A program made the translations under genes and the position numbers. This document shows, in pieces, positions 17,687-20,470 of a DNA stretch of 64,000 nucleotides (positions are counted from its first letter, which is position 1; every line of letters begins with the position of its first letter). Below the pieces are notes generated by a model. It made no database searches, was not told the origin of the DNA, and saw nothing but the letters and a program-made list of their open reading frames with translations. The DNA comes from Octopus bimaculoides (taxonomy: Eukaryota): assembly GCF_001194135.2 (NCBI RefSeq), contig NC_068994.1:4924617-4988616 (forward strand), in the 5' to 3' direction.

Positions 17687-20470
17687 TCACAGTTGCCACA
17701 AATAAGTACTCATAGGAGGAAATTCTTCAACTGTTTTGTTGATGGAGTTTGAAGAAGTCTTTGGAGGTTTACTGGCAGTCTTGTTGTGGGTCTTCTTGTG
17801 GCGATGTAGTGTGTCGCTCCTAGCAAAGTGTTTAGGGCACAAGTCACAGTGGAAGGCCTTCTCACCTGTATGGGTCCGTTTGTGTAGCCGTAGGTAATGT
17901 TTCTGGGCAAATGTTTTGAAACAGAAGTCACACTGGAACGGTCGTTCTCCTGTATGTGTTCTGCGGTGGATATGGAGGGAATTCCTCTGTGCAAATTGCT
18001 TGAAGCAGAAGTCACACTGAAACGGTTTCTCCCCAGTGTGGGTTCTTTTATGCAATTGCAGGTAGTGTTTGTGGGCAAAGTTCTTGAGGCAGACTTCACA
18101 CTGGAATGGTTTCTCTCCTGTGTGTGTTCTCTTGTGTATCTGTAATGTGTTTCTCTGAGCAAACTGTTTGAAACAAATCTCACATTGGAACGGTCTCTCT
18201 CCGGTGTGAGACCTTTTGTGAACCTGCAGATAATGCCTCTGGGCAAACAGCTTCATACAAACATCACACTGGTAATGTTTCTTTGTCGTATCACCTTTTA
18301 TCGAAGTGATGGTGGTAACATAGGTACGTTTCTGAGAAACCTTCTCATGAAGCTTCTTATGGGCTCGTAGTTTGTTGCTCTGAGCAAACTGTTCAGGACA
18401 GAGGTCACAATGGAAAGGTTTCTCTCCCGTGTGAGTCCGTCGATGAATCTGAAGTGTAGTTTTGCGTGCAAATTTCTGGATACAAAAATCACATTGGTAT
18501 GGCTTTTCGCCAGTGTGAGTTCTTTTGTGAATAACCAAATAATGCTTCTGGGTGAACTTTTTCAAGCAGACATCGCAATGAAGGAGTTTCTCTCCTGTAT
18601 GAAGCCTCTTGTGGATTTGCAGATAGTACCTTTGGGCAAACTGCTTGAGACAAATGTCACACTGGTTCCGTTTTTCTCCAGTATGTATGGTCATGTGAGT
18701 GCGCAGGTAATAGCGTTGGGCAAACTGTTTGTGGCAGATGTCACACTGGTACTTCTTCTTGCTAATATGTGTCTTTTTGTGCATCTGGAGTTTAATTCTC
18801 TGCGAAAACTTTTCAGGACAAACATCGCATTGGAATGGCATTTCACCAGTGTGCGTTCTACGATGGATCTTTAACGTATCTTTTCTGGAAAACCTCTGAA
18901 TGCAGAAGTCACATTGAAATGGTTTCTCGCCAGTGTGAGATCTTCGGTGTATGGCTAAGTAGTAGCGCTGGGCAAACTGCTTGTGGCAAATGTCACAAAA
19001 GTAAAACTTCTTCCCACCTGAGACATTATGAAGATCTTCAAATCTAGGAATATCAGGTGAGACTCCTTGATAACTGCTGGAATTGCTTTTTTGAGATAAA
19101 GAAGTCTGCATTTGAAGGTGAGGTTGATACTTTGGGGACTGAGCTTCAGGGCTTTGGATCGGGGGTGATGACATTGTTGGAAAACTGCTGCTAATTGGAG
19201 CTTTAGGTTCTGCTAAGTGGTTTTTGCGATGTCTTTTTAGGACATCTCTGCGAGAGAACTGTCTGTGACAGATGTCGCATTGGAACGGTTTCTCTCCAGT
19301 ATGTTTCCTTCGGTGCATGTGCATCAAATATTCCTGAGCAAACTTCTTGCCGCAGTAATCGCAGAAGAGCTGTTTGAGGGGTTGAGAATGACGGGGTTGT
19401 TCATCTTCGTCCTCCTCTTCATCATCATCCTCTTGCTGTTGATGTTGTTTTACGGAGCTCTGCGAGAGTTTGTTCGGGCCATATTGTTTTTGAGACACAT
19501 CACCATGGAATGATTTATCAATACTAGCAGTGGAGCTCTTTTGAGAAGAACTCTCCTTAGATGATTGTCCGCTCTCCAAGCTTGACTGCATTCTGTCAGT
19601 CGTCGGTAAGTAACACGGCTGAGAATACTGGCTGCTGTACATATTGTTACCAGGAAACACTGTCTGACCAATATAGGGCAGTGGCAGTCTCTGGCTCTCT
19701 ATAGTTGACTCATGGGAGAACTGGCTCCCAGACAGGTCACTGTTGCTGTTGTTGTCTGGTTTGTCAACTGGTGATGCTATTCTCTCCTTCTCCAGGTTAT
19801 GTCTGTGGGAAGAGATCTGTTTACTAGAGATGCTGTTGTGAATATTTTTCTCAGGGACATGTGACATCCTCGAAGCATCAAGAGAGTTTCCATGAGAAAA
19901 CTGTTTCCCCATGATGCTGGGACTATGAGATGACTTTTCGTGCGACATTCTCTGTGAGGCCTGCACATGTTCATGTGAATAGTGCTTACCAGACGAACTA
20001 CCTACACTGTTGAGGATAGATTTGTCAGCAGCAAGTGATAACCTCTGTGAACTGTGTGAAGAATGAGATGCGGACGAGGTATGAGAATGAGATGAACTCT
20101 GTCTATGGTGGAGGTGTTTGCTAGTCAGTTCATTGTTGTGTTGATGTACAGACTTCTCAGCGATTGACATCATTCGGTGCTGCTGGGCATGGTTTGATGT
20201 GTGGCTGCTGTGAGAGACATGACCATGGCTGTACTGGGACCGACTCAGGTCACTGTGCAGTGACTTCTCAACAGAGTGACTTTGCAACATACGCTGGGTG
20301 TCCAGTGCATGATCATTGTTGTGACTGAAATGTTTGCTGGCGGAAGCCAGGGTATTGTGTATTGATTTCTCGGGAATGTGAGACATTCGTTGAGGATGAA
20401 GACTATGAGCTGGGTGGAAGGGCATCCCATACATGTCATAGTGGAATGGAACACCAGCAGATCTCTCCAT
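17687..20470 (-). CDS. C2H2 zinc-finger protein ZNF-A, 927 aa: His/Ser-rich repeat N-terminus, acidic patch, 16 fingers in blocks of 2+8+6
   Basis: Uninterrupted ORF; good start context ccaccaaagATGG; canonical C-x2-C-x12-H-x3-H fingers with TGEKP-type linkers at 19217-19369 (2), 18347-19003 (8) and 17786-18274 (6). Confidence 0.97.
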   Translation of the reverse strand: MERSAGVPFHYDMYGMPFHPAHSLHPQRMSHIPEKSIHNTLASASKHFSHNNDHALDTQRMLQSHSVEKSLHSDLSRSQYSHGHVSHSSHTSNHAQQHRMMSIAEKSVHQHNNELTSKHLHHRQSSSHSHTSSASHSSHSSQRLSLAADKSILNSVGSSSGKHYSHEHVQASQRMSHEKSSHSPSIMGKQFSHGNSLDASRMSHVPEKNIHNSISSKQISSHRHNLEKERIASPVDKPDNNSNSDLSGSQFSHESTIESQRLPLPYIGQTVFPGNNMYSSQYSQPCYLPTTDRMQSSLESGQSSKESSSQKSSTASIDKSFHGDVSQKQYGPNKLSQSSVKQHQQQEDDDEEEDEDEQPRHSQPLKQLFCDYCGKKFAQEYLMHMHRRKHTGEKPFQCDICHRQFSRRDVLKRHRKNHLAEPKAPISSSFPTMSSPPIQSPEAQSPKYQPHLQMQTSLSQKSNSSSYQGVSPDIPRFEDLHNVSGGKKFYFCDICHKQFAQRYYLAIHRRSHTGEKPFQCDFCIQRFSRKDTLKIHRRTHTGEMPFQCDVCPEKFSQRIKLQMHKKTHISKKKYQCDICHKQFAQRYYLRTHMTIHTGEKRNQCDICLKQFAQRYYLQIHKRLHTGEKLLHCDVCLKKFTQKHYLVIHKRTHTGEKPYQCDFCIQKFARKTTLQIHRRTHTGEKPFHCDLCPEQFAQSNKLRAHKKLHEKVSQKRTYVTTITSIKGDTTKKHYQCDVCMKLFAQRHYLQVHKRSHTGERPFQCEICFKQFAQRNTLQIHKRTHTGEKPFQCEVCLKNFAHKHYLQLHKRTHTGEKPFQCDFCFKQFAQRNSLHIHRRTHTGERPFQCDFCFKTFAQKHYLRLHKRTHTGEKAFHCDLCPKHFARSDTLHRHKKTHNKTASKPPKTSSNSINKTVEEFPPMSTYLWQL

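What the first reader, a model, noticed from the sequence alone, without database searches (positions are those of the whole stretch)
19610..19666. Non-finger motif shared by both paralogs: candidate cephalopod ZNF effector motif
ZNF-A QTVFP-GNNMYSSQYSQPCY aligns with the ZNF-B N-terminus QPVFPMGNQHN--FYGQPMY (63166-63219), with 10 identities in about 20 positions. ZNF-B then has SEKSYNTL, like the ZNF-A repeat PEKSIHNTL. The surrounding linkers and finger helices have diverged completely, so retention suggests function. This may be a KRAB-independent regulatory module of the expanded octopus C2H2 family.
Basis: partly seen in the sequence, partly recalled or inferred. Interest (0 to 1): 0.72.

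Follow-up and report, generated by a model that had tools for sequence, protein, structure and literature searches.

The report
Decayed zinc fingers, one conserved box
The short stretch shared by two neighbouring octopus zinc-finger genes is real but only weakly better than chance: in one gene it opens a conserved N-terminal box of a small cephalopod gene subfamily, while most of the "non-finger" sequence in both genes is old zinc fingers that have lost their zinc-binding residues.

Summary
The window is Octopus bimaculoides.

- **ZNF-B (61165-63231, minus strand).** The segment opens a 47-residue N-terminal box. The box is conserved in three paralogue groups from Octopus, Argonauta and cuttlefish, which also share a Trp-rich C-terminal box. 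Selection acts on the protein: synonymous sites are saturated, while pN is 0.09 in codons 1-27 and 0.55 in the spacer. A profile search of 1.84 billion representative proteins found only about six true clusters. It is therefore not a module of the roughly 1,450-member octopus C2H2 expansion.
- **Back half of the box.** This part is a zinc finger that lost all four ligands. In cuttlefish it aligns without gaps to a finger model at 19 bits.
- **ZNF-A (17687-20470, minus strand).** Its 367-residue "non-finger" region is an array of about eight such ghost fingers. "PEKSIHNTL" is a relic of HTGEKPFxCxxC. ZNF-A has no C-box, its segment is internal, and a family model built without it scores it at about 1 bit. 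Pairwise similarity gives p of about 0.003-0.01, and a harsher background gives about 0.15.

Interest is modest.

The parts
61165..63231 (-). ZNF-B: a single open reading frame of 688 aa. The O. bimaculoides protein is an exact match in the public collection, and the O. vulgaris/O. sinensis orthologue ('zinc finger protein 2 homolog') is 99% identical.
63091..63231 (-). N-box of ZNF-B, residues 1-47 (MYSFQPVFPMGNQHNFYGQPMYPNNYLKCPEKPLLSSEKSYNTLDHC). It starts at Met1, with an in-frame stop two codons upstream. It is conserved in three paralogue groups. AlphaFold2 predicts it as disordered.
63166..63219 (-). This is the most constrained part of the N-box: pN is 0.09 for codons 1-27 while synonymous sites are saturated.
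63100..63123 (-). SEKSYNTL, ZNF-B residues 37-44. It aligns with MDKPFNYDF of cuttlefish P0012 and with GEKPFxCxxC of a canonical finger, so it is a relic linker plus hairpin.
61993..62967 (-). ZNF-B array of 12 canonical C2H2 fingers. A 13th finger lacking the last His follows at 61906-61992.
61198..61383 (-). C-box of ZNF-B, residues 617-678. It is Trp-rich (..PQSWESNYLWSRGYPMPP..WPSVP..CGVKQSKQTPWNNIQGIH) and conserved across the same family. It has no Pfam or PDB match.
17687..20470 (-). ZNF-A: a single open reading frame of 927 aa. An in-frame stop lies five codons upstream of the ATG, and a putative 3' splice site sits about 17 nt upstream. Neither this exact protein nor 10 shorter starts is in the public protein collection.
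19370..20470 (-). ZNF-A residues 1-367: an array of about 8 decayed ('ghost') zinc-finger units. The RM/RL anchors of the ..QRMSHxPEKSxH.. units lie at residues 28, 60, 99, 143, 174, 201, 261 and 293. The other two reading frames are full of stops. The units show no DNA-level similarity to each other.
19610..19675 (-). It lies inside ghost unit 261-292. Its second half, SSQYSQPCYL..DRM, is a copy of ZNF-A's own repeat core [KS]Q[FY]SH...L...QRM.
19787..19939 (-). The best-preserved ghost finger of ZNF-A, residues 178-228. It scores 10.9 bits against a three-finger model, and 0 of 1000 shuffles reach that score.
20315..20449 (-). N-terminal ghost finger of ZNF-A, residues 8-52 (PFHYDMYGMPFHPAHSLHPQRMSHIPEKSIHNTL..). 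It scores 6.9 bits with shuffle p of 0.003. It has the same finger register and the same position after Met1 as the ghost finger in the family N-box. It includes PEKSIHNTL (20348-20374).
17786..19363 (-). ZNF-A's 16 canonical C2H2 fingers.

Best explanation
Two different things lie behind the resemblance.

**1. ZNF-B's segment (shown).** It is the first part of a 47-residue N-terminal box, always starting at Met1 with the pattern MY[PS]xQ...[GS][NS]Q...Y.QP.Y...LK...[ED]K. This box defines a small coleoid-wide subfamily of poly-zinc-finger proteins. The subfamily has three paralogue groups, found in Octopus, Argonauta and cuttlefish, and its members also share a Trp-rich C-terminal box.

**2. 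Origin of the box (shown).** From about residue 10 onward the box is a former C2H2 finger plus TGEKP linker plus the next hairpin, and all four zinc ligands have been lost.

**3. Present function of the box (inferred).** It is predicted to be disordered, and it is constrained at the protein level as tightly as the working fingers. It most probably now acts as a short linear docking motif at the free N-terminus, that is, as a cofactor-recruiting (effector) element. This would be a ghost finger put to a new use.

**4. ZNF-A (shown).** It is not a member of that subfamily.

**5. The 266-287 segment (inferred).** It is one strongly diverged unit of that array. Its likeness to the ZNF-B box is weak, lies 4-8 residues out of the ghost-finger register, and most likely reflects composition plus chance rather than a shared effector module.
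For: **Family and its range.**
- Relatives covering 83-87% of ZNF-B share both terminal boxes.
- The N-box profile searched against 1.84 billion representatives gave 17 hits. About six are true members. The rest are ordinary multi-finger proteins matched only at profile positions 21-41.
- Named members come from O. bimaculoides, O. sinensis, O. vulgaris, Argonauta hians and Acanthosepion pharaonis.

**Selection.** Comparing ZNF-B with the L004 orthologue, pS is 0.8-0.9 (saturated). pN is 0.09 in codons 1-27, 0.31 in 28-47, 0.55 in the spacer and 0.047 in the fingers.

**Ghost finger in the N-box.**
- Cuttlefish P0012 residues 10-56 align without gaps to a three-finger model at 19.0 bits, and P0024 at 12.5 bits.
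- Against the finger-pair model they score 15.7 and 8.7 bits, and 0 of 500 shuffles reach either.
- hhalign of the N-box against finger pairs gives P = 8.5e-4.
- A PDB profile search returns only C2H2 proteins (WT1, KLF10, Aart), matched at helix end + TGEKPF + hairpin, with E = 3.7e-4.

**Ghost fingers in ZNF-A.**
- Residues 178-228 score 10.9 bits (0 of 1000 shuffles). Residues 8-52 score 6.9 bits (p = 0.003).
- The anchor spacing of the units is shown.

**Disorder.** AlphaFold2 gives pLDDT below 30 for ZNF-B residues 1-84 and 443-688.

**ZNF-A is outside the family.**
- It has no C-box (p = 0.54).
- The family model scores the segment at 0.7-1.1 bits, a score common in background ORF fragments.
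- Finger identity to ZNF-B (47%) is in the same range as identity to vertebrate ZNFs (36-44%).
Against: **For a real relationship between ZNF-A and the N-box.**
- Pairwise similarity of ZNF-A 266-287 to the N-box is better than most nulls allow (p 0.0007-0.017).
- Three deeply diverged B-group N-boxes and the cuttlefish one all pick the same ZNF-A segment as their best hit (p 0.0025-0.014). These tests are not independent of each other.
- The same segment contains MYSSQ, which matches the family's start signature MY[PS]xQ (shuffle p 0.005-0.007). This was noticed after the fact.
- The two genes are neighbours (41 kb apart, same strand), and a third N-box gene lies about 112 kb away in O. sinensis. 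A diverged tandem duplicate is therefore plausible.

**Limits of the other claims.**
- ZNF-B on its own shows no significant ghost-finger signal (p = 0.4). Its ghost origin rests on homology with P0012 and P0024.
- The docking or effector function is untested.
- The disorder prediction rests on a 5-sequence alignment.
- No ZNF-A orthologue could be retrieved.
Confidence: 0.6

Rival explanations
1. ZNF-A 266-287 and the ZNF-B N-box are homologous copies of one functional, KRAB-independent effector motif that both genes have retained. For example, ZNF-A might be a diverged tandem duplicate of a B-group gene that gained an N-terminal extension and lost the C-box.
For: - Pairwise p is 0.0007-0.017.
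- The same ZNF-A segment is the best hit for all B-group members and for cuttlefish P0012.
- Four of the five family-invariant positions after Met1 are matched (Y2, Q5, Q19, Y22).
- MYSSQ sits inside the segment.
- The order N-box-like segment, then DKSFHGDVSQKQY ghost hairpin, then spacer, then fingers matches the family order.
- The genes are neighbours inside an N-box gene neighbourhood.
Against: - The family model gives only 0.7-1.1 bits, a level reached about 0.15 times per 367 residues in background ORF fragments.
- In every true member the motif is at Met1. In ZNF-A it is 265 residues inside the protein.
- ZNF-A has no C-box.
- It has none of the family's short linkers or CKKPFCNQFFL-type fingers.
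- The second half of the ZNF-A segment is better explained as a copy of ZNF-A's own repeat core.
- The alignment is 4-8 residues out of the ghost-finger register.
- No ZNF-A-like protein appeared among the profile hits.
Confidence: 0.22
2. The N-box is conserved for a reason other than cofactor docking. One possibility is control of protein stability or N-terminal processing: the invariant Met-Tyr start is the type of N-terminus that, from general knowledge, NatC-type acetyltransferases and N-degron pathways recognise. Another is a constraint at the mRNA level around the start codon.
For: - M1 and Y2 are invariant in every member and always sit at the extreme N-terminus.
- The region is predicted to be disordered.
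- Conservation is strongest in codons 1-27, next to the start codon.
Against: - Conservation runs for about 47 residues, far beyond what N-terminal recognition needs.
- Synonymous sites in codons 1-27 are saturated (pS 0.92) while pN is 0.09, which argues against an RNA-level constraint.
- The co-conserved C-box suggests a protein-level module.
Confidence: 0.12
3. Nothing functional is present. Both segments are Q/N/Y/P/S-rich low-complexity filler, and the family N-box is only a slowly decaying finger remnant with no role of its own.
For: - The composition is biased.
- Pfam finds nothing in any N-terminus, even at E up to 10.
- The whole-N-terminus alignment is not significant.
- AlphaFold2 predicts disorder.
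Against: - pN is 0.09 in the N-box and 0.55 in the adjacent spacer, with saturated synonymous sites.
- The box is retained in three paralogue groups across octopods and a cuttlefish.
- The zinc ligands are gone but the other positions are kept, which is not what neutral decay would leave.
Confidence: 0.06

Closest known systems
Degenerate ('fossil') zinc fingers in tandem C2H2 proteins. These are described for vertebrate KRAB-ZNFs (PMC2865497, citing Looman et al. 2002, Mol Biol Evol 19:2118).
   Same: - They are in-frame finger units that keep the framework spacing (F-x5-L, H-x3-H position, TGEKP[FY] linker) but lack the Cys/His ligands.
- They lie N-terminal to the working array.
- ZNF-A residues 1-367 and the back half of the N-box fit this description.
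   Different: - Here all four ligands are gone in every unit.
- The ZNF-A array is long (about 8 units) and still kept as an open reading frame.
- One relic, the N-box, is under purifying selection as strong as that on real fingers, which implies a new role. The vertebrate relics are described as non-functional.
SNAG domain of Snail/Gfi/Insm zinc-finger repressors. From general knowledge, this is a short N-terminal motif that needs the free N-terminus and recruits LSD1-CoREST.
   Same: - It is a short, unstructured motif beginning at Met1 of a C2H2 protein.
- It is conserved within a subfamily.
- It is separate from DNA binding.
- This is the closest functional analogy for how the N-box may work.
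   Different: - There is no sequence resemblance (MPRSFLVKK compared with MY[PS]xQP.[FY]P).
- The N-box is longer (about 47 residues) and is paired with a C-terminal box.
- No partner is known and nothing was tested here.
KRAB domain (Pfam PF01352), the TRIM28-recruiting effector of tetrapod KZFPs.
   Same: - It is an N-terminal, non-DNA-binding conserved element of tandem zinc-finger proteins.
   Different: - KRAB is a folded module of about 75 residues, encoded on its own exons and present in hundreds of paralogues.
- The N-box is 47 residues long, predicted disordered, lies in the same exon as the fingers, and is present in three paralogue groups only.
- Pfam finds no KRAB here.
- The source's name 'KRAB' for the A. 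pharaonis member is not backed by any domain match.
Tyr/Gln-rich low-complexity activation regions, such as the SYGQ repeats of FET proteins (from general knowledge).
   Same: Y-x-(x)-Q-P units occur twice in the N-box (YSFQP, YGQP) and in ZNF-A (YIGQT, YSQP). The region is predicted to be disordered.
   Different: There are only two units, they sit at fixed positions with invariant residues, and there is no extended repeat array. This points to a specific motif rather than a phase-separating domain.

Membership tests
Coleoid N-box/C-box zinc-finger subfamily (defined here): ZNF-B | N-box beginning at Met1 with MY[PS]xQ ... Q13 ... Q19 ... Y22 ... K28, K32, K39 | tested here: met
   All family-invariant positions are present, and the profile hit for its 99%-identical orthologue P0001 has E = 1.5e-21.
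Coleoid N-box/C-box zinc-finger subfamily: ZNF-B | Trp-rich C-terminal box (..PQSWE.NY.WSRG[FY].MPP..W.[NS]VP..C..K[QH].[KR]Q..W) | tested here: met
   Residues 617-678 align with P0005, P0012, P0024, P0139 and L003.
Coleoid N-box/C-box zinc-finger subfamily: ZNF-A | N-box located at the extreme N-terminus | tested here: not met
   The only N-box-like segment is internal (residues 266-287). The true N-terminus, MERSAGVPFHYDMYG.., scores -3.5 bits on the N-box model.
Coleoid N-box/C-box zinc-finger subfamily: ZNF-A | Significant match to an N-box profile built without ZNF-A | tested here: inconclusive
Shuffle p is 0.023-0.045, but 63 background hits of equal or higher score occur in 146,000 residues. 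Pairwise p is 0.0025-0.014.
Coleoid N-box/C-box zinc-finger subfamily: ZNF-A | C-terminal box | tested here: not met
   The C-box model scores the ZNF-A tail at 0.3 bits, with shuffle p = 0.54.
KRAB zinc-finger proteins | KRAB A/B box (PF01352) N-terminal to the finger array | tested here: not met
   No PF01352 hit was found in the whole proteins (E up to 0.1), in seven N-termini (E up to 10), or in P0123/P0139.
C2H2 zinc finger (functional, zinc-binding): N-box and ZNF-A repeats | Cys-x2-Cys ... His-x3-His ligand set | tested here: not met
   No C..C.{12}H.{3,5}H pattern occurs in ZNF-A 1-367 or ZNF-B 1-86. Pfam finger models do not match these regions.
C2H2 zinc finger (descent): N-box and ZNF-A repeats | Framework in canonical register: aromatic, F-x5-L, [ED]K[PS][FYI] linker, 28-residue period | tested here: met
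   P0012 scores 19.0 bits without gaps, P0024 12.5 bits, ZNF-A 178-228 10.9 bits and ZNF-A 8-52 6.9 bits. All exceed, or nearly always exceed, shuffled controls. hhalign gives P = 8.5e-4. The PDB hits are all C2H2 linkers. ZNF-B alone is not significant.
SNAG-type N-terminal repressor motif | Recruitment of a corepressor through the free N-terminus | not testable with these tools
   Only the position at Met1 and the predicted disorder are shared. There is no sequence similarity.

The most novel reading that the evidence does not exclude
The N-box and the Trp-rich C-box together form a previously undescribed, coleoid-specific effector system of an old zinc-finger subfamily that predates the octopod-decapod split. 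The N-box would be a ghost zinc finger turned into a cofactor-docking peptide. ZNF-A would keep a diverged internal copy (YIGQTVFPGNN-MYSSQ-YSQPCY), left over from a B-group duplicate whose reading frame was extended upstream through older ghost fingers. On this reading, parts of the octopus ZNF expansion inherited, and are now losing, this module.
Probability: 0.15. Interest if true: 0.55.

Novelty: new member of a known kind. Interest (0 to 1): 0.3.

Why it matters
Cephalopods carry one of the largest C2H2 zinc-finger expansions in animals, and no effector domain comparable to KRAB is known for it. The one dedicated survey I read, PMC12513265, contains none of the words 'motif', 'effector' or 'N-terminal'.

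This analysis shows that the candidate motif is not the missing general effector. It does define a small, ancient, strongly constrained subfamily with two conserved terminal boxes. These are concrete, testable candidates for cofactor-binding peptides in cephalopod transcription factors.

It also shows that long "non-finger" regions of octopus ZNFs can be arrays of decayed fingers. This affects finger counting, the reading of "linker" conservation, and gene-family phylogenies.

Tried and rejected
- **Word-index homology searches.** A search with ZNF-A residues 1-367 returned nothing. A search with an N-box + C-box alignment also returned nothing, not even P0024, whose exact substrings were in the query. 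The index is therefore lossy and these negatives carry little weight.
- **Exact look-ups of ZNF-A.** The full ORF and 10 alternative Met starts are all absent from the collection. No ZNF-A orthologue could be obtained.
- **Orthologous loci.** The 10-kb flanks around the ZNF-B and P0138 orthologues in O. sinensis and O. vulgaris do not reach the expected ZNF-A position. tblastn found no ZNF-A N-terminal match there.
- **Pfam.** Scans of seven N-termini at E up to 10 found nothing relevant.
- **PDB.** The C-box has no hit.
- **Recent tandem duplication.** ZNF-A's protein repeats are not explained by it: there is no DNA-level similarity between units.
- **Frameshift origin.** The idea that unit 261-292 is a frameshifted PEKS unit is rejected, because the alternative frames carry stops and show no resemblance.
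- **C-box relic in ZNF-A.** The ZNF-A tail ('STYLWQL') as a C-box relic is rejected (p = 0.54).
- **LxCxE motif.** LKCPE in ZNF-B fits the pocket-protein LxCxE pattern, but it occurs in only two family members, so it is probably chance.
- **Source species.** A literature search for the Logan run accessions found nothing. The species behind SRR11869390, SRR29271456, SRR25097169 and ERZ21867824 remain unidentified.
- **RNA families.** An Rfam scan of the window found nothing.
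Full report
**What is in the window.** The window holds two C2H2 zinc-finger genes on the minus strand, and no others.
- ZNF-A is an uninterrupted ORF of 927 aa at 17687-20470, with 16 canonical fingers.
- ZNF-B is an ORF of 688 aa at 61165-63231, with 12 canonical fingers plus one that lacks its last His.
- ZNF-B's exact sequence is in the public collection on a 60.6-Mb record that also carries O. bimaculoides ZFP2. Its O. vulgaris/O. sinensis orthologue is 99% identical. The window is therefore Octopus bimaculoides.
- Both genes look like single coding exons whose ATG follows an in-frame stop closely.
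- ZNF-A's exact product is not in the collection, and neither are ten shorter versions.

**The observation.** The coordinates and residues are exactly as stated. The SEKSYNTL / PEKSIHNTL pair also exists. The best local alignment extends to ZNF-A Y266, giving YIGQTVFPGNNMYSSQYSQPCY against YSFQPVFPMGNQHNF-YGQPMY.

Significance depends on the null model.

| Test | Result |
|---|---|
| Whole non-finger N-termini, Smith-Waterman | p 0.05-0.09; best path is a different one |
| ZNF-B 1-24 vs ZNF-A 1-367, motif shuffled | p 0.007-0.009 |
| Same, ZNF-A shuffled | p 0.0007 or less |
| Same score in 127 control proteins | reached by 1-2 proteins |
| Both segments shuffled (composition matched) | p 0.0027 by score, 0.017 by identities |
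| Family model built without ZNF-A | same register, 0.7-1.1 bits; p 0.023-0.045 |
| That score in 146,000 residues of six-frame ORF fragments | 63 hits, about 0.15 per 367 residues |

- All three B-group N-boxes and the cuttlefish N-box choose the same ZNF-A segment (p 0.0025-0.014). These tests are not independent of each other.
- The segment also contains MYSSQ, the family's start signature (p about 0.005). This was noticed after the fact.
- I therefore rate the similarity as suggestive, not established.
- The statement that the fingers have "diverged completely" is wrong. The arrays are 47% identical, which is ordinary framework similarity, and ZNF-A is about as close to vertebrate ZNFs.

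**What the ZNF-B segment is.**
- Relatives covering 83-87% of ZNF-B all begin MYPVQP.Y..GNQ...Y.Q..Y...LK..[ED]KS...[ED]KPF. They all end with a Trp-rich box..PQSWENNYLWSRGFPMPP..WPNVP..C.VKQ.KQ.PWN.IQ.MH.
- A 46-position N-box profile was scored against all 1.84 billion representative proteins. It gave 17 hits at E of 0.001 or better, and about six are true members.
- Cluster members name the taxa: O. bimaculoides, O. sinensis, O. vulgaris, Argonauta hians and the cuttlefish Acanthosepion pharaonis. Unnamed Logan and ENA assemblies add further members.
- There are three paralogue groups. At least one spans octopods and decapodiforms, so the box predates the coleoid split.
- Only a handful of clusters carry it, although O. 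bimaculoides has 1,453 C2H2 sequences (PMC12513265). It is not a feature of the expansion.

**Selection.** I compared ZNF-B with a deeply diverged orthologue (L004). Synonymous sites are saturated (pS 0.8-0.9). pN is 0.09 in codons 1-27, 0.31 in 28-47, 0.55 in the spacer and 0.047 in the first fingers.
- A more distant genome (L003) keeps both boxes.
- AlphaFold2, run with a 5-sequence alignment, gives pLDDT below 30 for residues 1-84 and 443-688. This points to a disordered peptide motif. The shallow alignment is a caveat.

**Ghost fingers.** The non-family hits of the profile search were ordinary multi-finger proteins. They matched only at profile positions 21-41, which correspond to helix end plus TGEKPF. 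Following this lead gave the results below.

| Sequence | Model | Score | Control |
|---|---|---|---|
| Cuttlefish P0012, residues 10-56 | three-finger | 19.0 bits, no gaps | no shuffle run |
| P0012, residues 15-56 | finger-pair | 15.7 bits | 0 of 500 shuffles reach it |
| O. bimaculoides P0024 | three-finger / finger-pair | 12.5 / 8.7 bits | finger-pair: 0 of 500 shuffles reach it |
| N-box alignment vs finger pairs | hhalign | P = 8.5e-4 | |
| N-box profile vs PDB | profile search | E = 3.7e-4 | only C2H2 proteins hit (WT1, KLF10, Aart) |
| ZNF-A 178-228 | three-finger | 10.9 bits | 0 of 1000 shuffles |
| ZNF-A 8-52 | three-finger | 6.9 bits | p = 0.003 |
| ZNF-B alone | three-finger | not significant | p = 0.4 |

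- The P0012 alignment is GSNQFNFDMHSQAFYQSPHLKCPEKSLTMDKPFNYDFFSKGFTRRVN against GekPfqCevCkkafsqkgnLklhkrthtgekpfqCdvCekafsqren. All four zinc ligands have been replaced.
- The same holds for ZNF-A. Its 367-residue N-terminal region is a series of about eight units. RM/RL anchors lie at residues 28, 60, 99, 143, 174, 201, 261 and 293, and each unit follows the pattern QRMSH-x-PEKS-x-H...[KS]Q[FY]SH.
- ZNF-A's N-terminal ghost finger (residues 8-52) is in the same register and position as the one in the family N-box.
- QRMSHxPEKSxH therefore corresponds to HKRTH-TG-EKPF-x-C. The PEKSIHNTL / SEKSYNTL likeness is inherited finger-linker sequence.
- The ZNF-A units have no DNA-level similarity to each other, and the other reading frames are closed. 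The array is old but still maintained as coding sequence.
- ZNF-B's ghost origin rests on its homology with P0012 and P0024, because ZNF-B alone gives no significant signal.
- Pfam sees none of this.

**Where this leaves the ZNF-A segment.**
- It lies in unit 261-292, which has the same length as unit 28-59.
- Its second half, SSQYSQPCYL..DRM, matches ZNF-A's own repeat core, for example GKQFSHGNSL..SRM. This corresponds to the F-S-Q-x3-L part of a finger.
It therefore cannot be positional homology inherited from a common finger.
- ZNF-A has no C-box. It also lacks the family's short HTGELYKC / HTGDLFYC linkers.
- A real relationship is still possible, for example a diverged B-group duplicate. 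Supporting this, the genes are 41 kb apart, and a third N-box gene lies about 112 kb from the ZNF-B orthologue in O. sinensis. I put that possibility at roughly one in four.

**Mechanism.**
- Shown: the N-box and C-box family, its taxonomic range, protein-level constraint, the ghost-finger origin of the back half of the N-box, and the ghost-finger origin of ZNF-A's repeats.
- Inferred: the N-box now works as a short docking peptide at the free N-terminus, an exapted ghost finger. It would be analogous in logic to the SNAG motif and is possibly paired with the C-box.
- Alternatives: a role in N-terminal processing or stability, or no role at all. The second is hard to reconcile.

**Comparison with known systems and novelty.**
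- Degenerate fingers are known in vertebrate KRAB-ZNFs (PMC2865497).
- No KRAB domain is present here.
- The cephalopod C2H2 survey I read contains none of the words 'motif', 'effector' or 'N-terminal' (PMC12513265).
- The N-box/C-box subfamily appears undescribed. Even so, it is a new member of a familiar kind: a subfamily-specific terminal motif plus decayed fingers.
- Interest is modest.
- The decisive test I could not run is conservation of residues 266-289 in ZNF-A orthologues.

Noticed in passing
window 61198-61383 (minus strand): ZNF-B and all its family members share a Trp-rich C-terminal box (..PQSWESNYLWSRGYPMPPLLGSSWPSVPSGYSCGVKQSKQTPWNNIQGIH..). It is more strongly conserved than the N-box, has no Pfam or PDB match, and is predicted to be disordered.
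   Followed up: partly
window 62048-62841: A 330-bp tandem repeat lies inside the ZNF-B finger array (2.4 copies, 77% matches). It represents a duplicated block of four fingers.
   Followed up: no
window 61906-61992 (minus strand): The last ZNF-B finger lacks its second His (..NLNNHKRTRTG). The same RTRTG ending is kept in the distant L003 gene, so the defective finger is conserved.
   Followed up: no
ZNF-B fingers, window 61993-62967: Canonical TGEKPF linkers alternate with linkers one residue shorter (HTGELYKC, HTGDLFYC, HTGELYYC). Family members P0005, P0012 and P0024 show the same alternation, but ZNF-A does not.
   Followed up: no
Its chance of occurring in shuffles is 0.005-0.007, but this was noticed after the fact. 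Initiation at Met277 would give ZNF-A a family-like N-terminus. Nothing supports that start, because many ATGs lie upstream of it in the same exon.
   Followed up: partly
window 17687-20470: The intact 927-codon ZNF-A ORF is absent, as an exact protein, from a collection that does hold the neighbouring ZNF-B from the same genome. It may be unannotated or modelled differently.
   Followed up: partly
window 20487-20510 (minus strand): A run of 17 T followed by ..AAAAGCAG ends about 17 nt upstream of the ZNF-A ATG. It looks like a 3' splice site, which would put an intron in the 5' UTR.
   Followed up: no
L003 2132-4290 (ENA ERZ21867824, contig ctg101597l): The ZNF-B-like gene of an unidentified, distant species keeps both the N-box and the C-box, but its reading frame shifts at least twice. 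It is either a pseudogene or carries long-read indel errors.
   Followed up: no
P0123 (Acanthosepion pharaonis CAE1165441.1): Its source names this family member 'KRAB', but it has no KRAB domain in Pfam. Its model also starts 17 residues inside the N-box.
   Followed up: yes
L006 7599-7742 and L007 7603-7746: An isolated finger-like coding remnant lies about 2.3 kb upstream of the P0138 gene in both O. sinensis and O. vulgaris.
   Followed up: no
window 33874-34820, 36343-36668, 38166-38337, 60670-60924: A stretch open in several frames on both strands lies at 33.9-34.8 kb. There is also a 179-bp tandem repeat and long (TA)n, (AGAT)n and (TATC)n microsatellites between and beside the two genes.
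   Followed up: no
tool behaviour: The word-indexed protein search returned nothing for a query alignment containing exact substrings of a protein it had returned earlier (P0024). Its negative results for short or low-complexity queries should not be trusted.
   Followed up: yes
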